Source: Octopus bimaculoides
Taxonomy: Eukaryota
Reading direction: 5' to 3'
Length of the DNA: 64,000 nt
Assembly: GCF_001194135.2 (NCBI RefSeq)
Contig: NC_069000.1
Location: 44,126,810 to 44,190,809 of the forward strand
The notes beneath the pieces were generated by a model. The model did no database searches. It was not told the origin of the DNA and worked only from the letters and a program-made list of their open reading frames with translations. The position numbers and the translations under genes were made by a program. Shown here one piece after another: positions 1,061-63,199 of the stretch (within the stretch, counting starts at the first letter, position 1; each line of letters begins with the position of its first letter).

Positions 1061-1160
1061 TAAATATGTGTGTGTGTGTGTATTCGTGTATGTATATATA
1101 TGTATATTTGTGTAAGTGTGCATATATATACATATACACACACATGTATATATATTTATA

Positions 1161-1312
1161 TTATCTTTTACTTGTTTCACTCACTGGACTGTGGCCATGC
1201 TGGGGCCCCACTTTGAAGAGTTGGAACAAATCGACCCCAATACTTTTATTTTTTTAAAGCTTGGTACTTATTCTATCAGTCTCTTTTGCCAAACCACTAC
1301 ATTATGGGATAC
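1161..1312 (-). mobile_element. SINE family A, 3' portion
   Basis: TATCTTTTACTTGTTTCA...GGCCATGCTGGGG...TGGTACTTATTCTATCAGTCTCTTTTGCC, shared with copies at 12791, 13945, 25505, 38048. Confidence 0.85.
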
Positions 1313-1317
1313 ATGTG

Positions 1318-1484
1318 GCATGATTAGAATTTTTTTTAGGGTGTGTAAAGAGGGAAAGAACTCTCATGTGCAATTTTGATGAAATTCGAATCATAGGTAT
1401 TCCAGTTCCTTAAAGAAAATATAACAGAAAAGTCTCATTCTTCAATTGCATGTAACACGGGCAACGCCAGGTATCTCTGCTAGT
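1318..1484 (+). mobile_element. Non-autonomous Helitron, 3' end
   Basis: Ends CACGGGCAACGCCAGGTATCTCTGCTAG followed by T: CTAG terminus at 1480-1483 with a degenerate subterminal GC-rich hairpin. Confidence 0.55.
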
Positions 1485-4662: not shown

Positions 4663-4945
4663 CTGACATGGCTGTGTGGTTAGGAAGTTTGTGGTCTTGG
4701 GTTCAATCTCACTGTGTGACACCTCGGACAAATGTGTTTTACTATATAGCACCAGGCCAACCAAAGCCTTGTGGATGAATTTGGACAACAGAAACTGAAA
4801 GAAGCCCATTGTGTGCGTCTTTCTGTTCTTGTCCTGACATCATGTAATTGTTGTAAATGAGCATCATCATCAGCATACAAGCGGTGTTATTCGTTTCCAG
4901 TCTTCTGTGAAAAACATGTCTGGCCATAGAAAATCTGCCTCAACA
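4663..4945 (+). mobile_element. SINE family A head with C-type tail
   Basis: tRNA-like A box TGGCTGTGTGG, B box GGTTCAATCTC, then CCAAAGCCTTGTGG...GAAACTGAAAGAAGCCC. Confidence 0.8.
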
Positions 4946-5311
4946 ATGATGATGGTGGCTTCAGGGGCATTTGAACTCAGGATATAGAGCATCGGACAGG
5001 GTGCCTTGTGGTATTTGTCCAGGCTCTAACAATTCTGCCAAGCCAACACCCTGCACTGGCATCTTTTTTTAATTGATCCTGAAAGTGTAAAAGTCAAAGT
5101 TGATTTTGGTAGGATTTGAACTCAGAGTACAGAGACTCAGAACAAATACTGCAATGCATTATGACTGACATTCACACACAATACGGTTTTACTTTAAAAT
5201 TTCCCAAAGCATTCCAAACGCCCAACATTATCGATAAACTAAATATCAGGTTTGACAATACAAATCAGGAAAATGGGATTGACACACACACACACACACG
5301 AGCATCTTGAG

Positions 5312-5560
5312 AGGAAAGCTGGGCATAAGAAATATCAGATGTATTGTGCAAGAGAGACGACAGCGCTGGTATGGTCATGTGATGCATATGATCAAGGACA
5401 GCTGTGTAATGTGCCAATCTCTGTGGAGGGAACTTGTGGAAGAGGTAGACCCAGGAGGACATGGGATGAGGTAGCAAAGCATGATCTTCAAACGTTGGGC
5501 CTCACAGAAGCAATGACAAGTGACCAAGACCAATGCTGTGAAGTATCTTTGCCAAAACCT
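5312..5560 (+). mobile_element. RTE-clade LINE ORF2 C-terminal fragment (frameshifted)
   Basis: Two frames give IVQERRQRWYGHVMHM and VEGTCGRGRPRRTWDEVAKHDLQTLGLTEAMTSDQD, matching the RTE R.RW.GHV...RGRP..TW signature. Confidence 0.85.
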
Positions 5561-6399
5561 TTTTAATAATGTAAGCTAAATATAGCTGTAGGCAAATTAT
5601 TTACACAGACACACAGTCTGGCCAAGTTGGTTTGGCTCAAGAATGGATGTAACTCTCCTAATTTTTAATAGATATTTGATAAGTTATCAACTGGTCATTA
5701 TATTTATCTCTGTATACGAGGTGGAGGCTGGTGGTGGGGGTAGGCACAGATGCAGATACGTACACAGGCACAAACTGTTGTCCAAATCTTGCCACAGATA
5801 TTGTTAGAAGGGCAACCTACTTACTTATTCAGACAATAGGCTGAATCAAAAATGAATGATTAATAAATTATTATAATCAGGAGAGAGAGAGAGAGAGAGA
5901 GGGGCGGAGGGAAGAAAAAGGAGACACACACACATACAGAAAGACAGAGGGACAGAGGGAGGGAGAAAGAAGTAGAGAATAAAAAACAAGAAATGAAGAG
6001 AGAATAAGTGCGTTTATATGCGTGTGACTATACACACAGATATATACATACACACACACACGTATTTGTGTAGAGGGTTGTTGTATAGAGTATATAGGTG
6101 TGTATTTTGTGTGCATGTATATACATATGTTTATATATATATATATATATATATAACTGATTCTCATATTCCCATTTGCATTTAAACCGGCAATAGTTTA
6201 TGTCTAGCATAGCTAGAAGTATTCTTGATGAGCTGAGATGAGCATTGCTTTAAATTAAATTTAATTTAAATTAAATTAAGTTTCATTAATTACTTAATTA
6301 ACGAATTATATGTATTCGTCTTGAAACAGCTGTTGAAAGTAATTAAATTATGTTCCTGCAAAATGCCTCTCTACATTTTATTTTATAACACATTCCGTT

Positions 6400-7888: not shown

Positions 7889-8910
7889 GTATGTATGTAT
7901 ACACACATACATACATACATACGTGAATTGTAATATGTTTTTTTAATTTCATTTCATTTGGCTAGAGATCGTAACATTTGGAAATTAATTAAATTAAACA
8001 GCTAACGAATGTTTTATACCAATCTATGGAACTATGGCAAGCTCTCTAAGTCAATACAGATTGTTAAGAAGTAAAAGGTAAACAGAAAGAGAGAGAGTAA
8101 GAGAGCAGAGAGAGAGAGAGAGAAAGAATAGAGAGTGACAGGTAAATAACATGAATATCTAAACTAAAGCTGAAAATGGTTGTCTAAAAAAATAAAATAA
8201 AATAAAAGCCAGACTCAGTGTAATTGCTTTTGCATCATAATATAACAAGAGACGACAATTTTGTGATTAAAGGGGGAAGGAGATGGGGTGTGTGTGTGTG
8301 TGTGTGTGTGAGGGGGGTGAGTATTGATTTTATTGATCTGTATTTCTTTTCCTTTTTTTTTTTTGATGAAGAAAGAAATAGTTTGAGAAATTTTACTTTG
8401 ATAAAAAATTAAAGATTTTTTTTTGTTATTTTTATTTGTTTCCAGTCATTGGACCATGGCCATGCTGAAGCATTCATCACCTTGGAGTTGATCACAGAAA
8501 TTATATATTTTTTCTTTTAAAGTTTGGTATTTATTTTGTCAATTCTGTTTGTTTACTTAATAAGTTATGAGGCATCAATGAAAAAACATACACACACATC
8601 TATGTGAATGTATACGTGTGTATATACATACATACATATACACACAATTTTCTTAATTTGACAGCTGTTTCAGGAAGCTCAGATTTACATAAAAATTATA
8701 ATGTTCATAATTTGAAAATGGAATATGCAAAAAGTCTTGGGTATGCAACCAGTAAATAGTCATACAGAGATATTACCATAAATCTGGCCCCCTTCATCAA
8801 AAGAAAGTTGGCAATGTCTACACACGCATACAAAAATGGGTTTCTATACAGTTTCCATCTACGAATTTCACTCACAGGGAATTGGTCAACCCAAAGCTAC
8901 TGTAGAAGAT

Positions 8911-11967: not shown

Positions 11968-12275
11968 ATCTTTAACTCGTTTCGGTCACTCGACAGAGGT
12001 CATACTGGGGCACTGTCTTGGAAAGTATTTAGTTGAATGAATCAACTGCCAAGTTATGGGGACATACACAAACCAACACTGACCAGTTGCCAAGCGGTGG
12101 TGAGCAACAAACACACACAACGGGCTTCTTTCATTTTCTGTCGACCATATTCACTCACAAGGCTTTGGTCAGCCCAAGGCTATTGTAGAAGACACTTGCC
12201 CAAGGTGCTATGCAGTGGGATTGAACCCAGAACTATGTGGTTGGGAAACAAGCTTCTTACCACACAGCCACACCC
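11968..12275 (-). mobile_element. SINE family A, near full length
   Basis: Contains GAAGACACTTGCCCAAGGTG (reverse of the CORE-like CCTTGGGCAAGT) and a tRNA-like head ending CTTCTTACCACACAGCCA. Confidence 0.9.
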
Positions 12276-12479
12276 GAGTCTATATACATATATATATTAT
12301 ACATACGCACACAGTTATGTATTTACACACACACACACACATATCATGCAGTCATATGAGAGTGTGGTAAGTGTTAGCAAAAGGATATGATATCATATCG
12401 TCATCATTAATTAATATCCAGGTTCCATGCCTGCATGGGTTAGATTATCTAATATAAAAATGAAGTTCTTGTTTCCTAT

Positions 12480-12740: not shown

Positions 12741-12790
12741 AGTAATATATCGCTTTTACATGTATAAAAAAAATACGGAAGCAACAGTTA

Positions 12791-13147
12791 TTTACCTTTT
12801 GCTAGTTTCAGTCATTAGACTGCGGCCATACTGGGGCACCACCTTGAAGAATTTTAACCCAGGACTTTATTTTTTTAAAGCCTGGTACTTATTCTATCAG
12901 TCACTTTTGCCACACTGCTAAGTTACAGGGACATAAACACACCAACACCAGCTGCCAAACAGATGTAGTGGGGGACAAACACAGACAGGCTTCTTTCAGT
13001 TTCCATCTACCAATTCCACTTACAAGGCTTTGATCAGCCAAGGGTTATAGTAGAAGACACTTGTTCAAGGTGTCATGCAGTGGGACTGAACCTGGAACCA
13101 TGTGGTTGGGAAGCAAGTTTCTTAACCACACAGCCACTTCTGTGCCT
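12791..13147 (-). mobile_element. SINE family A, full length (tRNA-derived, CORE-like central motif)
   Basis: Head, central GACACTTGTTCAAGGTG motif and 3' tail are all present. Resembles the octopus OR-type tRNA-derived SINEs; the exact family name is not verified. Confidence 0.9.
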
Positions 13148-13944
13148 TGGATATCATTGGATAAAAACCGAATGAGTTAGTGTGTAGGTAAAGAAGTAGG
13201 TGTGTGTGTGTGGGGGGGGTACAAGATAATATTCTGTGTAGATAATGTTTATATATGTAGGTTATTTTTTTAATAAATAAGATATACGAAAAGATATGAA
13301 CAACAAAAAAAAATTTTCTTAAATATTTTTTATGAAAAGTAAAGGATTTGAACTCGCGACTTCTCAATCGGTTCCTTTTCTAAATACACATTTATGCTAC
13401 TAATTCTTTGACTACTGTACTACTACCACTTACAAAAGAACACTATGCGCACACAAACATATATATACATGCATGCATACACACACACAAACACACAAAC
13501 ACATTTATAAAAGGAAATCAATTGAGAAAGAATGAGGGAAAACAGCAATTAGCAAACCACTTGTGAAAGTGGTTTGGTAAGAATAAATTAAAGGAGAGAG
13601 AGAGAGAGAGAGAGAGAATAAATTAGAGAGTGAGGCTGTAATACATAGATGTAAAGATATGAAAAGCAAGTAAACAAAGACAGAGAAAATACTGACGGGT
13701 CGAGGAGATTGCAAAGAAAACTGAAGAGTAAAATACATGGAAGTAGAGTCATTTAAGAAAACAACCGTAAAATATCATCTAGATTATAGTATATAATATG
13801 TGTGTGTGTGAATGACATATAGGGAAATGTTTTTCCTAGTGGAACATTTGAAGACTTTCTGTAGTTGCATGTCGATAAACTATGGAACACTTCTTTCATT
13901 TCCTCAGACTAACATCATCATTATTATTATTATTACCATTATAT

Positions 13945-14147
13945 ATATCTTTTACTTGTTTCAGTAATTTGGCTCTGGCCATGCTGGGGCACCACCTTTA
14001 GTTGAACAAATCAACCCCAGGACGTATGCTTTGTAAACCTAGTACTTATTCCATCGGTCTCTTTTGCTGAACCGTTAAGTTATGGGGACATAAACACACT
14101 GACATCGGTTGTTAAGTGATGTTGGGGGGACAAACACGGACACACAA

Positions 14148-14193
<46 letters not shown>

Positions 14194-14347
14194 GGTTTCT
14201 TTCAGTTTCCACCTACCAAATCCACTCACAAGGCTTTGGTTGACCCAAGACTATAGAAGACACTTGCTCAAGGTACTATGCAGTGGGACTGAACCCGGAA
14301 TCATGTGGGTGGTAAGCAAGCTTCTTACCACACAGCCACACCTGCAC
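13945..14347 (-). mobile_element. SINE family A, full length
   Basis: Same architecture as 12791-13147, with an internal (TA)n(CA)n tract. Confidence 0.9.
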
Positions 14348-16204: not shown

Positions 16205-16551
16205 CATAAAATCATCAGCATTCTTCTAATGTTCACTTTTCCATGCTTCCATGGGCCAGAAGGAGTTTATTGGGGCAGATTTTCTATGGTTGGATGCCCT
16301 TCCTGTCCCCTAACCTCACCTGTTCCCAAGCAAGGTAATATTTCCTCATGGATGGACATGTTTTTCACAGAAGATCGGAAATGAATAACACTGCTTGTAT
16401 GACAGTAACACAAACATACATACTTCAAGCAGACACATACATACACACATTATAAAACAAACACACACACACACACAGTGAGCTTCTTTCACTTTCCAAG
16501 TGGAACTGAACCTAGAACCATGTGGTTGGAAGGTAAACTTCTTAACCACAC

Positions 16552-16555
<4 letters not shown>
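16205..16555 (-). mobile_element. SINE family A head with C-type tail
   Basis: TTTCCATGCTTCCATGGG...GGATGCCCTTCCTG...TTTTTCACAGAAGA...GAACCATGTGGTTGG. Confidence 0.8.
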
Positions 16556-18200: not shown

Positions 18201-19566
18201 ATAGTATGATGTGAGGGAAACTTGACTGCCATTTCCAGGATGCCAGTCGATCACATAAGTTCCCTTGCAGACAGAAACCATGCAGCAACCAGTAGTGTGC
18301 GCACACACACGCACACGTGTGTGTATCTATCTATCTATAAGCAGATGAACTGAAACGAGTATCATGGCAGGCTTGAAAATTGTGAAGAGATTCCTACTTA
18401 AATGATAGCTTTGTTAACCCAATAAATAGAAAGAATAAAAAATATCCACTAAAGCAGTGTTGGGTACTTATTTTCACTGTTCGATATTACCATGTATGTA
18501 CGTGTGCATTTATCTATATCTATATATATATATATAGTCAGTAAATAGTGGGGTTGTGTTAACCACACGTGGAGAAATAATAGGAAAATGAAAAATAATA
18601 ATAGGCAGAATGCTAAACTGGAAGCATATTTGAATAAAGATTTCTAACCGGCTTTCATGGCGAACCAAATTTTCAAGAAGAGGGAGAATGAAAATGTTTT
18701 TTACAAAGAAGTACAAAATGAAGAAAATAATATATAAAAAAAAATAAGATATAAAAAAATAAATATACCAATACATTATATTGTCTTTGAGCTTTTGAAG
18801 TTCAATGGTAATTCATGTATATAATGGTTGGAAAAATAAGGATGCATGAGANNNNNNNNNNNNNNNNNNNNNNNNNNNNNNNNNNNNNNNNNNNNNNNNN
18901 NNNNNNNNNNNNNNNNNNNNNNNNNNNNNNNNNNNNNNNNNNNNNNNNNNNNNNNNNNNNNNNNNNNNNNNNNNNNNNNNNNNNNNNNNNNNNNNNNNNN
19001 NNNNNNNNNNNNNNNNNNNNNNNNNNNNNNNNNNNNNNNNNNNNNNNNNNNNNNNNNNNNNNNNNNNNNNNNNNNNNNNNNNNNNNNNNNNNNNNNNNNN
19101 NNNNNNNNNNNNNNNNNNNNNNNNNNNNNNNNNNNNNNNNNNNNNNNNNNNNNNNNNNNNNNNNNNNNNNNNNNNNNNNNNNNNNNNNNNNNNNNNNNNN
19201 NNNNNNNNNNNNNNNNNNNNNNNNNNNNNNNNNNNNNNNNNNNNNNNNNNNNNNNNNNNNNNNNNNNNNNNNNNNNNNNNNNNNNNNNNNNNNNNNNNNN
19301 NNNNNNNNNNNNNNNNNNNNNNNNNNNNNNNNNNNNNNNNNNNNNNNNNNNNNNNNNNNNNNNNNNNNNNNNNNNNNNNNNNNNNNNNNNNNNNNNNNNN
19401 NNNNNNNNNNNNNNNNNNNNNNNNNNNNNNNNNNNNNNNNNNNNNNNNNNNNNNNNNNNNNNNNNNNNNNNNNNNNNNNNNNNNNNNNNNNNNNNNNNNN
19501 NNNNNNNNNNNNNNNNNNNNNNNNNNNNNNNNNNNNNNNNNNNNNNNNNNNNNNNNNNNNNNNNNN

Positions 19567-20164: not shown

Positions 20165-20530
20165 GTCTTAGCTTTGGGTTTAGTCCCACTACACAACACC
20201 TTGGGCAAGTGTTTTTCAACAGTAGTCCTGGGCCAACCAAACCATGAGAGGGCATTTCGTAGTTGAGAACCAAAATAAGCTTGTCTTTTGTGTTTGTTTA
20301 CATTCATGCTTCTCGGAAAAATCATTCAGTTATGTGCAGTGATGTTGCTGTTATTTTAAAAAATTTTTCTATAGATAAACTGTCCGTTGGTTTAATGTAT
20401 TTGAAATGAGTAGAGATCGATAAAGAAGGTATCCGATTGAAATGAGTAAAGGGGCCCACTTTGATCGACCTTCAATTCAAGGCAGTGCTCCAGCTTGACC
20501 ACAGCACAATTACTACAAAGCGATAAAAGA
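20165..20530 (+). mobile_element. SINE family A, interrupted
   Basis: CACCTTGGGCAAGTGTTTTTC at about 20197; tail piece CAAGGCAGTGCTCCAGC...AAGCGATAAAAGA near 20480-20530. Confidence 0.65.
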
Positions 20531-25504: not shown

Positions 25505-25870
25505 CTTTATCTTTTACTTGTTTCAGTCATCAAATGGCAGCCATCCTGGGGCATCAGGTTGAAGAATTTTGAGTCAAACAAGTCAACCACAGAACTTATG
25601 TTTTTTTAAGCCTGGAACTTATTCTATTGGTCTTCTTTTGCCAAACCACTAAGTTATGGGGATGTAAACACACCAACACCGGTTGTCAAGCAGTGGTGGA
25701 GGACAAACACAGAAATACATATGTGCAAGAGGGACTTCTTTCAGTTTCCATTTACCAAATTCATTTGAAAGGCTTTAAATGGCCCGAGGCTATATTAGAA
25801 GACACTTGCCCAAGGTACCATGCAGTGGGACTGAACCTAGAACCATGTGGTTGGTGGGAAGCAAAATTCT
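25505..25870 (-). mobile_element. SINE family A, full length
   Basis: All family A modules are present, including GAAGACACTTGCCCAAGGT. Confidence 0.9.
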
Positions 25871-26413
25871 AACAAACAAAAAAAAAAGGGGGGGTGACAT
25901 TGACAAAGAAATGTCTGATGATGAAAAGAATGAAGATAACGACTATGGAAAATATAATTAATGATGAAACAGCACTTAACTACAGTAATGAGAAAATATG
26001 ATGGAATAAATTATAACGAGGTGAATATGATAGAAGAATTATTAGGAATTTTAATTTTTAGTATTTTATATTATCATCATCATCGTTTAACGTCTGCTTT
26101 CCATGCTGGCATGGGATGGACAGTTTGACTGAGGACTGCCGGGAACGACGTTGTCGCTCATGCTTTCTGCACTCGTCGGTTTCATCTTTTTCTTTTCTTT
26201 CTGATAAAAGGCAAAGACAGTACCCAAGACCCTTCTCCAAGGGATCTGACACAAATGGGAGAAAGAAGGAGGGATGGAGAGAAGGCACCCTGAAACGTTA
26301 TAGGGACCAGGTCTGAAAGTTTACAACAGAGTAGCCCCCCACTAAAAGCACCTGACGAGGGACCGAATGGAGCTGTTAAAACAGGGTGGCAGGTTAAGGC
26401 CATCACTTAAAAC

Positions 26414-27550: not shown

Positions 27551-28484
27551 GTTGCATGTTGTGTGATACAGCAAATTAGCATTTATCTGATGTAAAACTC
27601 ANNNNNNNNNNNNNNNNNNNNNNNNNNNNNNNNNNNNNNNNNNNNNNNNNNNNNNNNNNNNNNNNNNNNNNNNNNNNNNNNNNNNNNNNNNNNNNNNNNN
27701 NNNNNNNNNNNNNNNNNNNNNNNNNNNNNNNNNNNNNNNNNNNNNNNNNNNNNNNNNNNNNNNNNNNNNNNNNNNNNNNNNNNNNNNNNNNNNNNNNNNN
27801 NNNNNNNNNNNNNNNNNNNNNNNNNNNNNNNNNNNNNNNNNNNNNNNNNNNNNNNNNNNNNNNNNNNNNNNNNNNNNNNNNNNNNNNNNNNNNNNNNNNN
27901 NNNNNNNNNNNNNNNNNNNNNNNNNNNNNNNNNNNNNNNNNNNNNNNNNNNNNNNNNNNNNNNNNNNNNNNNNNNNNNNNNNNNNNNNNNNNNNNNNNNN
28001 NNNNNNNNNNNNNNNNNNNNNNNNNNNNNNNNNNNNNNNNNNNNNNNNNNNNNNNNNNNNNNNNNNNNNNNNNNNNNNNNNNNNNNNNNNNNNNNNNNNN
28101 NNNNNNNNNNNNNNNNNNNNNNNNNNNNNNNNNNNNNNNNNNNNNNNNNNNNNNNNNNNNNNNNNNNNNNNNNNNNNNNNNNNNNNNNNNNNNNNNNNNN
28201 NNNNNNNNNNNNNNNNNNNNNNNNNNNNNNNNNNNNNNNNNNNNNNNNNNNNNNNNNNNNNNNNNNNNNNNNNNNNNNNNNNNNNNNNNNNNNNNNNNNN
28301 NNNNNNNNNNNNNNNNNNNNNNNNNNNNNNNNNNNNNNNNNNNNNNNNNNNNNNNNNNNNNNNNNNNNNNNNNNNNNATATCAAAGGGCTGCGTGTGAGT
28401 GGAAAGAATAGGATTTATATTTATCAGATTATGTGATAAAAGAGAACTGTGTATATATATATATAATGAAAGAGAGGTGTGCGT

Positions 28485-33792: not shown

Positions 33793-34297
33793 AACATCCG
33801 GCTGGTAGTCAATGAGTCCAGCCCACCTACCAGCCCAGCTTTTCTTGCCAAATCAGCCAGCCAGCCTTGCCTTGCCGAGGCAACAAGTTGGCTTGGCTTC
33901 AGCCGCAAGGTGAGATAAAAAGGTAGGTTTTAAGGCTGGCTTAAAGCGTCATTTCAAACAAACAAACCTATGATAATCTTACTTATACAATGTAGCAGCC
34001 AAAGAGAAACTATAGTGTTTAGAACATTCTAGAAAGACTACAACAGTTGAGGTGTAAGAGTGTGGTGTAGGAGACGGGGGTGGATATACATGTAGATAGA
34101 TAGACGGATGGATGGAGGTGAAGGAATATACTCGAAAGCTAAGTAGAAACAAAACACAGGAAAAATGTGTATTTAGATATGGGCGTAGATACACACAAAG
34201 TAAGCATATAAATGCAAGGCAAGGTAGAAAGAAAATAGTACTCGAATACCAAAGGTAGAGTAACATGCTTTTATTAAATTAACTGCAAAAATTTTCC

Positions 34298-34377
34298 CAA
34301 AACTGTTACCCAGAGTTTCACGTTCCCATTCATCGGACAGTTGTAAATGGGAACATGGAAACTGAGCAACAGGTTTG
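34298..34377 (-). ncRNA. Candidate pri-miRNA-like hairpin
   Basis: Hand fold of the minus strand gives 32 pairs (4 G-U), one mismatch, bulges of 2 nt and 1 nt, and an 11-nt loop. Expression unknown. Confidence 0.4.
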
Positions 34378-34519
34378 TGAAAATTTCGCAGCTTTAATTA
34401 AAACATAATAATAATAACAACAACAACAGTAACAATCATTAATGATTTTTACCAGCGCGGAAATAAAACCTCGTAGGTAAATTTTATAAATATTTTATAA
34501 TTATGTACATAATTATAAC

Positions 34520-34800
34520 AAGGGCTTGGTCGAGCTTACGATCACGAGGTTGCGAGTTCGATTCGCGGACCGGGCTGCGTGTTGTGTTCTTGAGCAAGAC
34601 ACTTTAGATAATTCAGCTGTCGAAATGAGTTGCGACATCACTGGTGCCAAGATGTATTGGCCCCTTTGCCTTTCCCTTGGATAACATCAGTGGAGGCATG
34701 GGCGACTGTTGGCCTTCCACAAACAGCCTTATCCGGACTTGTGCCACGGAGGGTAACTTTCTAGGTGCAATCCCATGGTCATTCATGGCCATTCACATAA
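34520..34800 (+). mobile_element. tRNA-derived SINE with a V/Meta-type central motif
   Basis: B box GAGTTCGATTC followed by GTGTTGTGTTCTTGAGCAAGACACTT, a central motif typical of ancient metazoan SINE superfamilies. Confidence 0.75.
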
Positions 34801-34844
34801 ATCTACATATGACAGTACTCCATCCATTTTAAGGCAGTAGAATT

Positions 34845-34971
34845 CCAGAACGGTTAGGGAGGGGTCGGGCGAAAATGCTTTACAGTTCCATTATTTTTAA
34901 ATACTTTCCGAACTCCAGTTCAAATCCCGTCGGAGCCAACAGTTTTGCTTTTCATTTTTCTGCAGGCAAGG
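34845..34971 (+). mobile_element. SINE family B head (runs into a gap)
   Basis: GGGCGAAAATGCTT...CCAGTTCAAATCCCGTCGGAGCCAACAGTTTTGCTTTTCAT. Confidence 0.65.
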
Positions 34972-35364
34972 NNNNNNNNNNNNNNNNNNNNNNNNNNNNN
35001 NNNNNNNNNNNNNNNNNNNNNNNNNNNNNNNNNNNNNNNNNNNNNNNNNNNNNNNNNNNNNNNNNNNNNNNNNNNNNNNNNNNNNNNNNNNNNNNNNNNN
35101 NNNNNNNNNNNNNNNNNNNNNNNNNNNNNNNNNNNNNNNNNNNNNNNNNNNNNNNNNNNNNNNNNNNNNNNNNNNNNNNNNNNNNNNNNNNNNNNNNNNN
35201 NNNNNNNNNNNNNNNNNNNNNNNNNNNNNNNNNNNNNNNNNNNNNNNNNNNNNNNNNNNNNNNNNNNNNNNNNNNNNNNNNNNNNNACAACCATGTTACT
35301 GTTGTCATGCTGATTCCGATCGCGTTAAGGATACAGGTGACATTTCAGTGTATAATACGACAGT

Positions 35365-35630
35365 ATGTACTTGTTTCAGTCTTTTCCTGAACCGCTCAGT
35401 TAAAGAGACAGAAACACACCAACATCGGTTGTCAAGCGGTGGTGAGAGGACAAAGACAGACAGACAGACAGACATATATATATGTCTTTCAGTTTCCATC
35501 AATTAAATTGACGCACAAGGCTTTTGCCAACCCGAGACTAAAGAAGACGCTTGCCCAAAATGCCATGCAGTGGGACTGAACCTAGAACCATGTGGTTGGG
35601 AAGCAAACTTCTTACAACACAGCCACGCCT
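35365..35630 (-). mobile_element. SINE family A
   Basis: ACACCAACATCGGTTGTCAAGCGGTGG...ACGCTTGCCCAA...GAACCATGTGGTTGGGAAGC. Confidence 0.85.
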
Positions 35631-37795: not shown

Positions 37796-38047
37796 TCTTT
37801 TTTTTTAACTATATATATACATATATATATATATACATATATATNNNNNNNNNNNNNNNNNNNNNNNNNNNNNNNNNNNNNNNNNNNNNNNNNNNNNNNN
37901 NNNNNNNNNNNNNNNNNNNNNNNNNNNNNNNNNNNNNNNNNNNNNNNNNNNNNNNNNNNNNNNNNNNNNNNNNNNNNNNNNNNNNNNNNNNNATATATAT
38001 ATATATATATATATATAGTGTGTGTGTGTGTGTGTTTCCTATTTATT

Positions 38048-38370
38048 TTTATCTTTTACTTGTTTCAGACTGCAGCCATACTGGGGCACTGATTTGAAGA
38101 ATTTAGTCGAACGAATCGACTCCAGTCCATTTTTTTTTAAAGCTTGTACTTATATCAGTCATTTTTGCTGAACCGCTACATTACGAGGACATAAACAACA
38201 ACAACACCGGTAGGAGACAAACACACACACACGCGACAGGCTTCTTTCAGTTTCCATCTACCAAACTGGCCTGAGACTATAGTTGAAGACACTTGCGCAA
38301 GGTGTCACACAGTAGCATTGAATTCGGAACCATGTGGTTGGAAAGCAACTTCTTACCACACAGACACGCC
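38048..38370 (-). mobile_element. SINE family A
   Basis: TATCTTTTACTTGTTTCAG...GAAGACACTTGCGCAAGGTG...CTTCTTACCACACAG. Confidence 0.9.
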
Positions 38371-39334: not shown

Positions 39335-39500
39335 TGCAGTCATGGCTGTGTGGTTAAGAAGTTTCTCTCCCAACCATGTGGTTTCAGGTTCAGTCCCACT
39401 GTGTGGCACCTTGTGTGAGTGGGTCTTTTACTATATATAGCCCTGGGTCAACCAAAGCTTTTATGTGTGGATTTTGTAGATGGAAACTGAAAGAAACCTA
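39335..39500 (+). mobile_element. SINE family A head
   Basis: A box TGGCTGTGTGG, B box GGTTCAGTCCC, then GGCACCTTG. Confidence 0.85.
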
Positions 39501-57330: not shown

Positions 57331-58116
57331 TGAAGAAGCGAAAGATAATTATTATAACATATATATATATATATATATANNNNNNNNNNNNNNNNNNNNN
57401 NNNNNNNNNNNNNNNNNNNNNNNNNNNNNNNNNNNNNNNNNNNNNNNNNNNNNNNNNNNNNNNNNNNNNNNNNNNNNNNNNNNNNNNNNNNNNNNNNNNN
57501 NNNNNNNNNNNNNNNNNNNNNNNNNNNNNNNNNNNNNNNNNNNNNNNNNNNNNNNNNNNNNNNNNNNNNNNNNNNNNNNNNNNNNNNNNNNNNNNNNNNN
57601 NNNNNNNNNNNNNNNNNNNNNNNNNNNNNNNNNNNNNNNNNNNNNNNNNNNNNNNNNNNNNNNNNNNNNNNNNNNNNNNNNNNNNNNNNNNNNNNNNNNN
57701 NNNNNNNNNNNNNNNNNNNNNNNNNNNNNNNNNNNNNNNNNNNNNNNNNNNNNNNNNNNNNNNNNNNNNNNNNNNNNNNNNNNNNNNNNNNNNNNNNNNN
57801 NNNNNNNNNNNNNNNNNNNNNNNNNNNNNNNNNNNNNNNNNNNNNNNNNNNNNNNNNNNNNNNNNNNNNNNNNNNNNNNNNNNNNNNNNNNNNNNNNNNN
57901 NNNNNNNNNNNNNNNNNNNNNNNNNNNNNNNNNNNNNNNNNNNNNNNNNNNNNNNNNNNNNNNNNNNNNNNNNNNNNNNNNNNNNNNNNNNNNNNNNNNN
58001 NNNNNNNNNNNNNNNNNNNNNNNNNNNNNNNNNNNNNNNNNNNNNNNNNNNNNNNNNNNNNNNNNNNNNNNNNNNNNNNNNNNNNNNNNNNNNNNNNNGG
58101 GGGGAAAGAAGCTACA

Positions 58117-58572: not shown

Positions 58573-59114
58573 TTCCTAACATTTGACCCCCACCCCCAAC
58601 CCCAACCTTATCTCATATTTCTTTAAACAATAATTTTTAGAAGGGGGAAGAGCCAAGGAGTGAGAACTAGTTGCACCACGACCCTGACTTTACAGGGGAG
58701 AGTGATACAAGACGGGGGGGGGGTTTACAGAGCAAAATAATCTGGTGTCTCCTAGCTCCCTTAAAACACACCCTCTCTCTTTGTTAGCTCTGCCCTTTCT
58801 CGCTCATTTTCCCCCCTCTCTCCCCCCTCTCTCCCCNNNNNNNNNNNNNNNNNNNNNNNNNNNNNNNNNNNNNNNNNNNNNNNNNNNNNNNNNNNNNNNN
58901 NNNNNNNNNNNNNNNNNNNNNNNNNNNNNNNNNNNNNNNNNNNNNNNNNNNNNNNNNNNNNNNNNNNNNNNNNNNNNNNNNNNNNNNNNNNNNNNNNNNN
59001 NNNNNNNNNNNNNNNNNNNNNNNNNNNNNNNNNNNNNNNNNNNNNNNNNNNNNNNNNNNNNNNNNNNNNNNNNNNNNNNNNNNNNNNNNNNNNATATATA
59101 TATATATATATGCA

Positions 59115-59210
59115 TCTGGTGCGGCCATCTGGTTCGCCAGTCCTCAGTCAAATCGTCCAACCCATGCTAGCATGGAAAGCAGACATTAAACAATGATGAT
59201 GATGATGATA
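59115..59210 (+). mobile_element. SINE family C 3' end
   Basis: GCCAGTCCTCAGTCAAATCGTCCAACCCATGCTAGCATGGAAAGCAGACATTAAAC then (ATG)n. Confidence 0.85.
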
Positions 59211-59559
59211 TGTATATATATATATATATATACCTTTTTCTCTCTCTCTCTCTCTCTCTCATCCATTTAGTTTCTCTTGGTGGTGATGGTCCTTGATATA
59301 CGTATTTTATCCAACACTTGATTAAATCTTTTGTCCACCCTACTGTACTGTATGGTTGGCCATCGTTTGCGAGGGAATATGGAGTGGAAAAATGAACCAT
59401 ACTTCCGCTAATCGTTTTTAAGTTTTTATGTGGTGTCCGAGGTAGATATAGACAACCCTCTTGACTCTGTAACACACTGAACCCAGAGGAACAACAAAGA
59501 TGTAATGGCTGAAGAGAGAGAGAGATGCAGCTGCACTCAACTGGTATTTGTTTTCAGTT

Positions 59560-60365
59560 GAGTAGAAGATATGGTGCTGCATAGCTCATCAGGTGATTTG
59601 CAGCCACACAGAATGATCCCACTGTCAAATGCAACAAGGCATGGATGAGCAATAATGTTGCGAAAACCGAGACATTGGTCTTCACAAGGATGTCTTCCTG
59701 GTGTGCTCCACATCTTAGTGGAACATCATTGAGACATGTAGACAAGTTTAAGCATCTCAGAGCCATTTTCATGAGTGATGGCAAGCAGCAAACTGAACTG
59801 GCTGCTAGAATTGCAGGTGAGGGCACCGTAATGTACCAACTTTAGCATTTGATCCTCAGAAGAGGAGAGGGTGGTGAAAAAAACCCAAACTTGTTATTTC
59901 TAATTTGGTTTTGGTGCCTATCCTCACCTCTGCTCTTGAATGTTGGGTAATGAATGAAAGAACAGGGTTGTGAATACGAGCAACCAAAATGGGGTTCTTC
60001 CAAAGGATCTCTGGGGTAACAATACTCGACAGAGTGTGTTGCTTGGAGATCCGGGAGCCTCTCCAAGTCGAGATGTTACCCTTCTGCATTGAGAGGTCAT
60101 AGCTCTGGTGCTATGGACATGTGATTAGAATGTTGCAGGAAAGAATTGCAAGACAGATTCTTCAAGCTATAAGCAATCCAGCAGGAATAAAATAAGAATG
60201 ACTCGGAATAGAATAAGAATGAGTTGGATAATATCCATAGCTTCTGTTGATCACACTTGGGAATCCAGCCAGAAAGTGTGAAGACGGTTGCTATGGAGAA
60301 GGTGCCTAATGACTCTACTCCAACAACCTGTACAGGAATAGTTGACAGAGAAAATGAGTGGATGG
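59560..60365 (+). mobile_element. RTE-clade (Rex3/Expander-like) LINE, 5'-truncated and decayed
   Basis: Broken frames give EDMVL (decayed ADDLVL), KTETLVFTR, LRHVDKFKHL..F.SDGK, PILTSALECWVM, KMGFFQRISGVTILDRV, IERS*LWCYGHVIRM and SHLGIQP; ends GAAAATGAGTGGATGG. Confidence 0.85.
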
Positions 60366-60519
60366 TTGGAAGTGGGGGGGGGGAGATGAACTGCTGCTCT
60401 GCATTGTGTTCAATGATAAAATCGTTTTACCAACTCGGAGTCTTTATAATGGTAATAACCAACAGGAAATCACCCAGAGAGCACTTTTTTTCTGCTAGTA
60501 ATACTATTGATCTTTTCTA

Positions 60520-60690
60520 CAATAGGCACAAGACCAGAAATTTTAGGGGAAGGGGTTAGTCGGTTACCTCGACCCCAGCACTCAGCTGGGACTTATTTTA
60601 TCCAACCTGAAAAAATGAAGGGCAGGATTTGAACACAGAACATAAGGATGGATGAAAAGTTGCTAAGCATTTTACCTGACATGCTAACAA
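60520..60690 (-). mobile_element. SINE family B
   Basis: AATAGGCACAAGACCAGAAATTTTAGGGG...CTCGACCCCAGCACTCAGCTGG...GATTTGAACACAGAAC. Confidence 0.8.
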
Positions 60691-60999
60691 TTATGTCAGT
60701 TTACAAACTTAAAAGTAAAGCCCCCATGTCATTTTTATCTTACAATTCTTTATGTCTTTACCGTCCCAAACTAACACCTGGTCCCTCTCCTATAATCAAG
60801 TACCAAACACCCAAACAATTTAATCACGCACCCTCACTATGTCATGCACTGCTCATAATAATAATACTACTAATAATAATAATGATAAGAATAATGATAA
60901 TAATAATAACCGTTTCTGTTATAGACACGAGGCCTGAAATTTTGGAGGAGAGATTAAGTCAGTTACAATTAACAAAGAGACTAAACCAACAATGTACTT

Positions 61000-61330
61000 C
61001 CCCAATTGGGGGAGGGAGTTCCACTGAGAGGTGACCAAAGAAACCTCACACATTTTGGACCCCTAACACCAAAGGCACCTCAGGTAGGCACCCTTCTCTC
61101 CCCCATTCCATCTGGCCTACAGGTGCCCACTTAGAGTAGGCCCATTCACATGGGCCATTCTTGCCACATTCACCCATCTTTCCACAAACTTACTGGGTGA
61201 CAGCCCCTCCCTCTCCAGCCTCACTTTCTTTCTCAGGTGGAACCTGAATAAGTCAATGGGGCTTTGGCCAAAGAGGAAGGTACCCGTCTTCAACCCTTTC
61301 AGTCACATCCACCACGCAACCTCTTTTGCC
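61000..61330 (-). mobile_element. L1/Tx1-like LINE ORF2 C-terminus and 3' UTR
   Basis: Minus frame: AKEVAWWM*LKGLKTGTFLFGQSPIDLFRFHLRKKVRLEREGLSPSKFVERWVNVARMAHVNGPTLSGHL*, stop at 61117-61119. Confidence 0.7.
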
Positions 61331-61344
61331 ATAATAACAATAAT

Positions 61345-61643
61345 GAGAATAAAAACCGGAGAATTAAGATCGCCAAGAAGTGGCAGCTGCGAGAGTCAAC
61401 CATAAAAGTTGTCTCTGTTGTCATCAGAGCAATGGGTTCGATTCCACCCAGCCTGAAGAAACATCTGGAAACATTAGAAATACCCGACAATCTAGGTGTA
61501 TTGCAAAAATCACCATTACTTGGAACTGCACGCATATTGCGTAAAATACTGTCTGAGGTCCTTGGTGTGACTTGACAGACAGTACAAACCCCAGGTAGAC
61601 ACAATATCTTCAATCAACGATATCACGATATTGTGCAATGTCT
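61345..61643 (+). mobile_element. R4/Dong-like non-LTR retrotransposon 3' fragment (end of the RLE domain)
   Basis: IKIAKKWQLRESTIKVVSVVIRAMGSIPPSLKKHLETLEIPDNLGVLQKSPLLGTARILRKIL matches the V.PVV.GALG...LQK..LLGTARILRK.L C-terminus; flanked by (TAA)n-like tracts. Confidence 0.8.
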
Positions 61644-62699: not shown

Positions 62700-62925
62700 C
62701 ATATGTGTGTGTCTTTCTGTCTATGTTTGTCTGTACCTCTAACACTTCACAACCAGTGCTGGTGTATTTATGTCCCTGTAACTTAGTTGTTTGGCAAAAG
62801 AGACTGATAGAATAAGTACCTGACTTTACAAAATAAAATAATAAATTCTGAATTTGATTAACATCACCTAAGGCTGTGCCCCAGTATGGCCACAGGCTAA
62901 TGAGTGAAACAAGTAAAAGATAAAG
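62700..62925 (+). mobile_element. SINE family A 3' half
   Basis: GGCAAAAGAGACTGATAGAATAAGTACC...GCCCCAGTATGGCCACAGGCTAATGAGTGAAACAAGTAAAAGATAAAAGATA. Confidence 0.85.
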
Positions 62926-63199
62926 ATAGACTATGGCTGAGAGATGATAGCTTACTTGAAGCAGCTGCCCTGAGTTTCTGCCTCAAGACAGGTCTGGAAC
63001 CTGGCACAACTGCACAAAAATGGTTTTTACAATTCAAAGAGAGGAAATTCAACCTCACTGACTCTCTATGTTCCAGACGATTTCTTGAGTTCAATAAGGA
63101 CGATTGAACAAGATCATCAATGAGGATCTGTGCCAAGCAGTGGGACTGAACCTGGTATTATGAGGTTGGGAAACAAGCTTTTTACCACACGGCCACATC

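What the first reader, a model, noticed from the sequence alone, without database searches (positions are those of the whole stretch)
34265..34406. Strand-asymmetric long hairpin with pri-miRNA geometry: candidate novel cephalopod microRNA
Seen: the minus strand of 34298-34377 folds by hand as CAAACCUGUUGCUC-AGUUUC-C-AUGUUCCCAUUUA-[CAACUGUCCGA]-UGAAUGGGAACGU-GAAACU-CU-GGGUAACAGUUUUG. That is 32 pairs over 33 stem positions, an 11-nt loop containing UGU, and two small bulges. Weaker pairing extends to 34265-34406. All four arm transitions in the core, plus about two in the extension, give G-U pairs on the minus strand and A-C mismatches on the plus strand (roughly 1 in 32 by chance if independent, noticed post hoc). 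Established: Drosha substrates have stems of about 33-35 bp, and coleoids have a large lineage-specific miRNA expansion (Zolotarov et al. 2022). Inference: a miRNA with arms near CAGUUUCCAUGUUCCCAUUUAC and UGAAUGGGAACGUGAAACUCUG, or an hpRNA/ADAR substrate. I do not recognise it as a known family. The alternative is a decayed fold-back element.
Basis: partly seen in the sequence, partly recalled or inferred. Interest (0 to 1): 0.75.

Follow-up and report, generated by a model that had tools for sequence, protein, structure and literature searches.

The report
Solitary 60-bp fold-back hairpin, unproven microRNA
A single 142-base inverted repeat in repeat-rich non-coding DNA would fold into an unusually long and stable RNA hairpin on one strand; it could be a young microRNA-like locus, but the stem is about twice the length a microRNA precursor normally has, and nothing available here shows that it is expressed or conserved.

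Summary
The hairpin is real. The minus strand of 34265-34406 folds at -59.8 kcal/mol (z = -10), against -39.7 for the plus strand. All 7 arm-to-arm transitions give G:U on the minus strand and none gives A.C (two-sided p = 0.016; p = 0.07 under another register; 3 of 600 neutral simulations reach the 20 kcal/mol asymmetry).

The helix runs on almost unbroken for 57-60 bp, with only a single A.G mismatch at the proposed base, and there is no CNNC in the 3' arm.

It matches no Rfam family. As far as the truncated supplementary files show, none of the 15 seed matches derived from the candidate arms appears in the conserved-target list of annotated Octopus vulgaris miRNAs, and the two found in the 8-mer table are labelled non-seed. 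It is single-copy in the window and has no clear target-site duplication.

I found no route to cephalopod genomes or small-RNA reads, so expression, genome copy number and conservation were not tested. The cephalopod origin was also not verified.

Best reading (about 0.5): a decaying fold-back inverted repeat that forms long dsRNA when transcribed. A young miRNA-like locus remains possible (about 0.25), and the G:U bias is the only evidence for it.

The parts
34265..34406 (-). Whole imperfect palindrome. As minus-strand RNA it forms one hairpin of 57-60 bp, -59.8 kcal/mol.
   Evidence: z = -10.0 against 200 shuffles
34343..34406 (-). 5' arm of the hairpin (minus-strand positions 1-64)
34335..34342 (-). 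Apical loop AACUGUCC (8 nt; 11 nt, 34333-34343, if the closing C-G pair is opened). UGU lies in the centre of the loop.
34265..34334 (-). 3' arm of the hairpin (minus-strand positions 73-142). It contains no CNNC.
34298..34377 (-). It is separated from the rest of the stem only by a 1x1 A.G mismatch.
34343..34364 (-). No read evidence.
   Evidence: Position derived; not tested
34311..34332 (-). No read evidence.
   Evidence: Position derived; its seed-match 8-mers are absent from the held Zolotarov supplementary files
34407..34428 (+). (AAT)3(AAC)4 microsatellite directly abutting the right end of the palindrome. It would hide any short target-site duplication.
34255..34258 (-). First CNNC (CUAC) downstream on the minus strand, 7-10 nt beyond the end of the full stem.
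   Evidence: Sequence

Best explanation
This is an isolated fold-back inverted repeat of about 142 nt in repeat-rich, apparently non-coding DNA. It is most likely the relic of a small palindromic (MITE or foldback-like) insertion or of a local inverted duplication. Its arms have since diverged by 7 transitions, 3 transversions and 4-5 small indels.

Shown: either strand can form a hairpin. The minus-strand RNA forms a much better one, about 60 bp, because every transition between the arms is G:U-compatible on that strand.

Inferred: if the region is transcribed on the minus strand, the RNA is a long, nearly perfect duplex. In a mollusc, which lacks Dicer-2 and siRNA-class Argonautes, such a duplex is expected to be edited and loosened by ADAR. 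At most it would be nibbled at low level and imprecisely by Drosha and Dicer-1, giving background small RNAs. I do not expect it to be a dedicated, conserved miRNA gene. The G:U bias suggests the minus-strand hairpin has been tolerated or mildly maintained, so it may be a proto-miRNA at an early stage.
For: - The stem is 57-60 bp and uniformly good along its whole length. Imperfections and G:U pairs are spread evenly, with no better-kept 22-bp duplex and no basal junction.
- The whole element is palindromic, AT-rich (34.5% GC) and about 140 nt, which is the size and form of MITE/foldback relics.
- The surroundings are microsatellites, at least 12 SINE copies and degraded LINE-like remnants (by eye; Pfam found no significant domain in them). 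No exon-like ORF was found either.
- There is no Rfam family match. Only generic hairpin hits appear, at 15-20 bits against gathering scores of 49-144.
- None of the 15 candidate seed matches appears in the conserved-target list of Zolotarov et al. The two found in the 8-mer table are explicitly labelled 'Non-seed kmer'.
- Base rate: only 162-164 miRNA genes per octopus genome, and the authors warn of many low-level background hairpin products.
- Molluscs lack Dicer-2 and siAGO, and no Dicer processing of long dsRNA was detected in a survey that included O. bimaculoides; editing was proposed as the fate of such RNA.
Against: - The 7:0 G:U versus A.C split (p = 0.016) and the 20 kcal/mol strand asymmetry (3 of 600 neutral simulations, 0 of 600 in the observed direction) are not expected for a neutrally decaying palindrome. 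They point to constraint on a minus-strand RNA.
- No second copy exists in 64 kb, although the window holds a dozen copies of another repeat.
- No target-site duplication is recognisable at the ends.
- A transposable-element origin is therefore inferred from form only.
Confidence: 0.5

Rival explanations
1. A young, lineage-restricted miRNA gene on the minus strand. Drosha measures about 22 bp from the apical junction, or uses the A.G and C.U mismatches as a pseudo-basal junction. Dicer-1 then releases a duplex near CAGUUUCCAUGUUCCCAUUUAC / UGAAUGGGAACGUGAAACUCUG. Alternatively, Drosha cuts about 13 bp above the true base (a UG sits at minus-strand positions 2-3) and Dicer-1 makes two successive duplexes.
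For: - The hairpin is very stable and strand-specific: z = -10 against -5.6, and all 7 transitions are G:U on the minus strand.
- The loop is 8-11 nt, and the apical 33 bp on its own looks like a precursor.
- It is single-copy in the window.
- Palindromic elements are a known source of miRNAs, for example hsa-mir-548 from Made1 (PMC1784062).
- Coleoids have 90 novel families, and the authors say species-specific ones were missed by design.
- A>T skew on the plus strand and the 10:3 plus-strand SINE orientation are weakly compatible with transcription of the minus strand.
Against: - The stem is about 60 bp with no single-stranded junction near the proposed cut, whereas about 35 bp is the recognised determinant.
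- No CNNC is in register, and the UGU is not at the loop edge.
- G:U pairs and defects are spread over the whole 60 bp rather than sparing one duplex.
- No Rfam match, and no seed match in the held Zolotarov tables.
- The prior is very low: about 164 genes in a genome of about 2.7 Gb (genome size from my own knowledge).
- There are no expression or conservation data.
Confidence: 0.25
2. A functional long-dsRNA element: either an hpRNA-type endo-siRNA precursor or a dedicated ADAR-binding or editing substrate within a longer minus-strand transcript.
For: A near-perfect duplex of about 60 bp maintained evenly along its whole length fits selection on long dsRNA better than selection on a 35-bp precursor. 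It is established knowledge that ADARs edit duplexes longer than about 30-50 bp promiscuously, and that coleoids edit heavily.
Against: Molluscs lack Dicer-2 and siAGO and show no endo-siRNA signature, so an hpRNA pathway has no known machinery (PMC11114477 and PMC12479628). Nothing suggests a function for an ADAR-bound hairpin in a gene-poor, repeat-rich region. Transcription is unproven.
Confidence: 0.12
3. A purely DNA-level palindrome whose G.T-type asymmetry arose without any RNA. One route is strand-biased mutation: transcription-coupled or replication-strand C>T and A>G excess on the minus strand. Another is hairpin extrusion on one DNA strand during replication, with template-switch correction that tolerates G.T.
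For: Two of the seven G:U pairs are CpG-to-TpG changes on the minus strand (CACG to CATG at 34355; CG to TG at 34287). The masked window shows a consistent A>T skew on the plus strand in 14 of 16 bins, so some strand-biased process acts here.
Against: The skew is small (G+T is 0.517 on the minus strand). Even a 58:42 mutational bias gives 7 of 7 only about 2% of the time. The template-switch idea has no specific support in this sequence.
Confidence: 0.1

Closest known systems
Canonical animal pri-/pre-miRNA hairpins (Microprocessor substrates; MirGeneDB-type genes, including the 90 cephalopod/coleoid/octopus 'Novel' families of Zolotarov et al. 2022)
   Same: A single stable stem-loop with an 8-11-nt apical loop. 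G:U wobbles are tolerated on one strand only. The apical 33 bp has precursor-like proportions.
   Different: The stem continues to 57-60 bp with no basal single-stranded junction. No CNNC, basal UG or loop-edge UGU is in register with the proposed products. There is no family match. Reads and conservation are unknown.
Transposon-derived palindromic miRNA precursors, e.g. hsa-mir-548 from Made1 MITEs (PMC1784062)
   Same: The whole element is a near-perfect palindrome, so a read-through transcript folds into a long hairpin. This is a plausible route from a selfish or duplicated repeat to a young miRNA.
   Different: Made1 is a multicopy family with a TA target-site duplication. Here no second copy and no duplication were found, and the genome was not available for searching. 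Made1 is about 80 bp (37-bp arms), while this element is 142 nt.
Drosophila hpRNA / endo-siRNA hairpins
   Same: A long, nearly perfect intramolecular duplex, longer than a miRNA precursor.
   Different: Those are processed by Dicer-2 and AGO2, which molluscs lack according to PMC11114477 and PMC12479628. They are usually longer still and often have identifiable target genes.
Inverted-repeat dsRNA substrates of ADAR (e.g. paired Alu repeats in mammals)
   Same: A duplex of more than 50 bp formed by an inverted repeat inside non-coding sequence. This is the expected fate if the locus is transcribed in an animal with very active ADARs.
   Different: This is a single compact foldback rather than two separate repeat copies. 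Editing was not examined.

Membership tests
Canonical animal miRNA precursor | Imperfect hairpin with at least 16 paired positions between the two candidate arms | tested here: met
   33 pairs in the 80-nt core, -36.7 kcal/mol, z = -7.0
Canonical animal miRNA precursor | Stem of about 35 bp bounded by single-stranded basal segments (basal junction about 11-13 bp below the Drosha cut) | tested here: not met
   Continuous stem of 57-60 bp. Below the proposed cut there are about 38 more stem positions, broken only by 1x1 mismatches and small bulges. Criterion from PMC6298569.
Canonical animal miRNA precursor | Apical loop of at least 8-10 nt | tested here: met
   8-nt loop, or 11 nt with the closing C-G pair opened
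Canonical animal miRNA precursor | Helper motifs in register: basal UG, loop-edge UGU/GUG, CNNC 16-18 nt after the 3p cut | tested here: not met
   No CNNC occurs in the entire 3' arm; the first is at 34255-34258, beyond the full stem. UGU lies at loop positions 5-7 of 11. The only UG at a junction is at the base of the full 142-nt stem. These motifs are facultative, and their use in cephalopods is not established. The mismatched GHG motif was not examined.
Canonical animal miRNA precursor | 20-26-nt reads from both arms, uniform 5' ends, 2-nt 3' offsets | not testable with these tools
   No small-RNA read data are accessible
Canonical animal miRNA precursor | Presence and arm conservation in a second species (the criterion used by Zolotarov et al.) | not testable with these tools
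   No cephalopod sequence could be reached. Protein-word searches, exact-ORF look-ups and DNA pattern scans all came back empty.
Known miRNA or other RNA family (Rfam 15) | Score at or above a family's gathering threshold | tested here: not met
   No hits at gathering thresholds in the whole window. The best sub-threshold hits are plant MIR161 (20.5 against 90 bits) and MIR2630 (20.1 against 144), which are generic long-hairpin matches.
Annotated Octopus vulgaris miRNA (Zolotarov et al. 2022) | Seed-match 8-mer of a candidate arm listed as a miRNA seed or conserved target site | tested here: inconclusive
   The 15 candidate 8-mers or 7-mers are absent from the target table. CATTCATA and GAAACTGA are labelled 'Non-seed kmer'. 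However, the held files are truncated and contain no full miRNA sequences; a let-7 control search was also negative.
Mirtron | Hairpin ends coincide with 5' GU and 3' AG splice sites with splice-site context | tested here: not met
   The 5' end reads AU|GUUUUA, which is not GURAGU. The 3' end reads AAUAAAAG|CAU with no polypyrimidine tract. The 136-nt hairpin is also far longer than mirtrons.
MITE / foldback transposable element | Terminal inverted repeats | tested here: met
   The whole element is an inverted repeat. In the aligned block, which includes 5 flanking bases per side, 54 of 69 ungapped columns are complementary at the DNA level.
MITE / foldback transposable element | Target-site duplication flanking the ends | tested here: inconclusive
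   The flanks are ...GAGTAAC| and |AATAATAATAAC... (plus strand). No abutting direct repeat is visible, and the right flank is a microsatellite that could have erased one.
MITE / foldback transposable element | Multiple dispersed copies | tested here: inconclusive
   No other copy exists in the 64-kb window at word size 7. One window excludes only extremely abundant families. The genome was not available.
hpRNA / endo-siRNA precursor | Host has a Dicer-2 / siRNA-Argonaute pathway that processes long hairpins | tested here: not met
   From the literature only: molluscs lack DICER2 and siAGO and show no endo-siRNA signature (PMC11114477 and PMC12479628). This assumes the window is molluscan, which I could not verify.
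ADAR long-dsRNA substrate | Near-perfect duplex longer than about 30-50 bp in a transcribed RNA, with clustered A-to-G mismatches in RNA-seq | tested here: inconclusive
   The duplex length is met (57-60 bp). Transcription and editing cannot be tested here.

The most novel reading that the evidence does not exclude
The locus is a very young small-RNA gene caught in transition. It would be a 60-bp foldback whose minus-strand hairpin is already under purifying selection, with only G:U-compatible changes fixed along the whole stem. In an animal without a siRNA pathway it would be processed by Drosha and Dicer-1 into one or two phased duplexes, making it an 'hpRNA-like' precursor feeding the miRNA machinery in a coleoid.
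Probability: 0.15. Interest if true: 0.5.

Novelty: new member of a known kind. Interest (0 to 1): 0.3.

Why it matters
If small-RNA reads and an orthologue confirmed it, this would add a lineage-specific miRNA to the coleoid expansion. It would also show how such genes start: from a long foldback that is trimmed towards Drosha geometry, in a phylum that has lost the siRNA pathway. If not confirmed, it is one of many inverted repeats in a repeat-rich genome and of interest only as a likely ADAR substrate. The practical lesson is that a hairpin's full extent has to be checked before it is described as pri-miRNA-shaped.

Tried and rejected
- Rfam at gathering thresholds on the whole window, and at permissive E-values on 34000-34700, gave only generic sub-threshold hairpin hits.
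- ARAGORN on the window found no tRNA.
- Searches for other copies found none beyond chance: arm pattern with 3 mismatches, blastn at word size 7 for 34200-34480 and blastn for 33800-35000.
- Routes to cephalopod or other related sequence all came back empty:
  - exact-product look-ups for five ORFs next to or over the hairpin;
  - a protein-word search with the 74-aa open frame spanning the hairpin and with a LINE-like tail ORF;
  - hairpin-core pattern scans of metagenome, viral and prokaryote genome collections.
- Full-text search for arm sequences returned only unrelated primer-type matches.
- Searches of the Zolotarov supplementary files for arm sequences and seed matches found nothing, but the files are truncated and hold no full miRNA sequences.
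- The hunt for exons or a host gene by ORF complexity and Pfam found nothing significant.
- Mirtron rejected: no splice-site context at the hairpin ends.
- Part of the abundant SINE rejected: 12 or more SINE copies in the window and none carries the hairpin.
- Chance hairpin rejected: z = -10, and it is the only non-microsatellite segment of its stability in the window.
- Evaluating the mirrored minus-strand structure on the plus strand gave a meaningless energy because non-canonical pairs are not penalised. I discarded it and used the plus-strand MFE instead.

Full report
**Observation.**
- The minus strand of window 34265-34406 reads AUGUUUUAAUUAAAGCUGCGAAAUUUUCACAAACCUGUUGCUCAGUUUCCAUGUUCCCAUUUACAACUGUCCGAUGAAUGGGAACGUGAAACUCUGGGUAACAGUUUUGGGAAAAUUUUUGCAGUUAAUUUAAUAAAAGCAU.
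- It folds into one hairpin of -59.8 kcal/mol. The mean of 200 dinucleotide shuffles is -25.9, giving z = -10.0, and none of the 200 reaches it.
- The plus strand folds the mirror hairpin at only -39.7 kcal/mol, z = -5.6.
It has 33 pairs, one C.U mismatch, small bulges and an 8-11-nt loop.
- The drawing, the coordinates and the strand asymmetry are all correct.

**How far the stem goes.**
It is not.
- The MFE and centroid structures have 57 and 60 pairs.
- The outer part contributes 27 pairs and about -23 kcal/mol. It is interrupted only by an A.A mismatch, a 3-nt bulge and a 1-nt bulge.
- Folding with 20-80 nt of extra flank adds at most two or three pairs, so the structure ends at about 34262/34409.

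**Strand asymmetry.**
- Aligning the 5' arm with the reverse complement of the 3' arm gives 7 transition differences within the element. All of them are G:U on the minus strand and therefore A.C on the plus strand.
- The rest of the divergence is three transversion mismatches (A.A, A.G, C.U) and four or five small indels.
- The G:U pairs lie at 34403/34268, 34392/34282, 34387/34287, 34367/34308, 34365/34310, 34355/34321 and 34345/34331. Three are in the extension and four in the core.
- Under strand-symmetric mutation each transition is equally likely to favour either strand, so 7:0 has a two-sided p of 0.016.
- In the internal loop around minus-strand positions 45-49 and 88-95 another register is possible. 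It replaces two indels with one indel, one transversion and one A.C, which gives 7:1 and p = 0.07.
- I ran a simulation that restores the seven wobbles to Watson-Crick pairs and re-deals seven transitions at random over the 60 pairs and both arms. It reached the observed 20.1 kcal/mol strand difference in 3 of 600 runs, and never in the observed direction.
- The signal is real but rests on seven events noticed after the fact.
- Two of the seven are CpG-to-TpG changes on the minus strand.
- After masking tandem repeats, the window has a small, consistent A>T excess on the plus strand: AT skew +0.066, positive in 14 of 16 4-kb bins.
- The abundant SINE lies 10:3 in plus orientation.
- Both features are weakly compatible with transcription of the minus strand, and with a modest mutational bias that would soften the p-value.

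**How unusual it is locally.**
- In an RNAfold scan of all 140-nt segments of both strands, every other segment with comparable energy is TG/CA/TA microsatellite. This is the only complex sequence in that class.
- It has no second copy in the window, although the window carries at least 12 copies of one SINE at 72-85% identity.
- No direct repeat abuts the two ends. The right end runs straight into an (AAT)3(AAC)4 microsatellite.

**Context.**
- The window is a gapped draft with 17 N runs totalling 4756 N. It is about 23% tandem repeat by TRF (9,856 of 64,000 bases masked, N runs not counted).
- It contains what look by eye like degraded LINE remnants, and no ORF that looks like an exon. Ten of the best candidate ORFs gave no significant Pfam hit, LINE-like ones included.
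- I could not identify a host gene.
- I also could not verify the organism.

**Comparison with known families.**
- Rfam 15 has nothing at gathering thresholds in the whole window. At permissive thresholds the hairpin picks up plant MIR161, MIR2630 and MIR7696 at 19-21 bits against thresholds of 83-144, which are matches to any long hairpin.
- The text-held supplementary files of Zolotarov et al. 2022 (PMC9699675) contain neither arm. In the files as held, none of 15 possible seed-match 8-mers or 7-mers appears in their conserved-target table.
- Two of these, CATTCATA and GAAACTGA, appear in their 8-mer table labelled 'Non-seed kmer'.
- Those files are truncated and hold no full miRNA sequences; a let-7 control search also found nothing. 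This is therefore only partial evidence that the hairpin is not one of the 164 annotated O. vulgaris genes.

**Fit to miRNA biogenesis.**
- The determinants that let Microprocessor tell pri-miRNAs from other hairpins are a stem of about 35 bp with a mismatched GHG, a basal UG, an apical UGUG and a downstream CNNC (PMC6298569).
- This stem is 57-60 bp.
- There is no CNNC anywhere in the 3' arm. The first one, CUAC at 34255-34258, lies beyond the whole stem.
- The UGU sits in the middle of the loop.
- If Drosha instead measured from the true base, where a UG sits at minus-strand positions 2-3, it would release a pre-hairpin with a stem of about 47 bp. Dicer-1 could then cut twice. This is inference only.
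- Defects and wobbles are spread evenly along all 60 bp. No single 22-bp duplex is better preserved than the rest, which is what a young inverted repeat looks like rather than a refined precursor.

**Fit to the rivals.**
- An hpRNA/endo-siRNA reading has no known machinery in molluscs. DICER2 and siRNA-class Argonautes are absent, and no 21-nt/19-overlap signature was seen (PMC11114477).
- A clade-wide survey that included O. bimaculoides found no dedicated endo-siRNA pathway and no clear Dicer processing of long dsRNA. It suggested that editing 'melts' such duplexes (PMC12479628).
- If the RNA is made, the default expectation from established knowledge of ADAR substrate preference is promiscuous A-to-I editing.
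- Palindromic transposons are a documented source of miRNAs, as with Made1 and mir-548 (PMC1784062). The transposable-element and miRNA readings are therefore stages of one path rather than exclusive alternatives.

**Weighing.**
- Base rates argue strongly against a miRNA. There are 162-164 genes per octopus genome, and the authors explicitly warn of many low-level background hairpin products.
- The G:U bias argues for RNA-level constraint on the minus strand. I put the Bayes factor somewhere between about 7 and 60, depending on register and mutational bias. This estimate is my own inference.
- My probabilities are:
  - about 0.5 for a decaying fold-back repeat with no dedicated function, which would be an ADAR substrate or a source of background small RNAs if transcribed;
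  - about 0.25 for a genuine young miRNA-like gene;
  - about 0.12 for a functional long-dsRNA element;
  - about 0.1 for a purely DNA-level or mutational origin of the asymmetry.

**Novelty and interest.**
- On any of these readings this is a new instance of a known kind of object.
- A further species-restricted miRNA candidate in a coleoid would not surprise a specialist. The strand-specific wobble pattern over a 60-bp stem is mildly interesting as a possible snapshot of miRNA birth.
- Interest: 0.3.
- The decisive tests need cephalopod data that these tools do not reach: read mapping, genome-wide copy number and cross-species alignment.

Noticed in passing
window 12037-12390, 12914-13137, 14178-14342, 25651-25873, 35390-35629, 38223-38370, 63130-63197, 8835-8909, 16499-16552 (+); 4698-4818, 20169-20298, 39343-39498 (-): At least 12 copies (72-85% identical) of one SINE-like repeat of about 230-350 bp. 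Its translation repeatedly gives ...LPKVLCSGTEPRTMWLG.KLLTTQP.... Ten copies lie on the plus strand and three on the minus strand.
   Followed up: partly
window 1116-1376, 12788-12915, 13939-14086, 25507-25660, 38040-38183 (+); 62784-62923 (-): A second repeat of about 150 bp. At five of its seven other hits it lies at or within about 100 nt of the upstream edge of a copy of the SINE above (on the minus strand at 62784-62923). The two are probably parts of one longer composite element.
   Followed up: partly
window 34521-34800 (+): Single-copy segment beginning with a tRNA T-arm-like motif (GGTTGCGAGTTCGATTCGCGGACC) followed by ...GTTCTTGAGCAAGACACTT.... It looks like the 5'-truncated head of a different tRNA-derived SINE, about 115 nt to the right of the hairpin. 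Neither ARAGORN (whole window) nor Rfam recognises it; the permissive Rfam scan reached only 34700.
   Followed up: partly
window 34495-34518: Perfect 24-nt AT-rich palindrome TTATAATTATGTACATAATTATAA, lying between the hairpin and the tRNA-like segment.
   Followed up: no
window 33801-33940: GC-rich segment rich in GCCAGCC and TTGCC repeats that folds at -56.7 kcal/mol. It is only modestly better than shuffles (z = -3.2 on plus, -2.4 on minus), so its stability comes mostly from composition.
   Followed up: partly
window 5243-5563 (+) and about 59100-61600 (+): Degraded LINE-like remnants, judged by eye: C-terminal motifs such as GRGRPRRTWDEV...LGL and ...IPPSLKKHLE...LLGTARILRKIL. They are too decayed for a significant Pfam hit or for the protein-word search.
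   Followed up: partly
whole window (4-kb bins): After masking tandem repeats, the plus strand has A>T (AT skew +0.066) in 14 of 16 bins, while GC skew is about 0. This could reflect transcription of the minus strand or the orientation bias of A-rich retroelements.
   Followed up: partly
window, 17 N runs (e.g. 18852-19566, 27602-28377, 57380-58098; nearest to the hairpin 34972-35286): 4756 N in 17 gaps, at least several of them flanked by microsatellites, which marks a short-read draft assembly. Sequence 566 nt to the right of the hairpin is missing.
   Followed up: no
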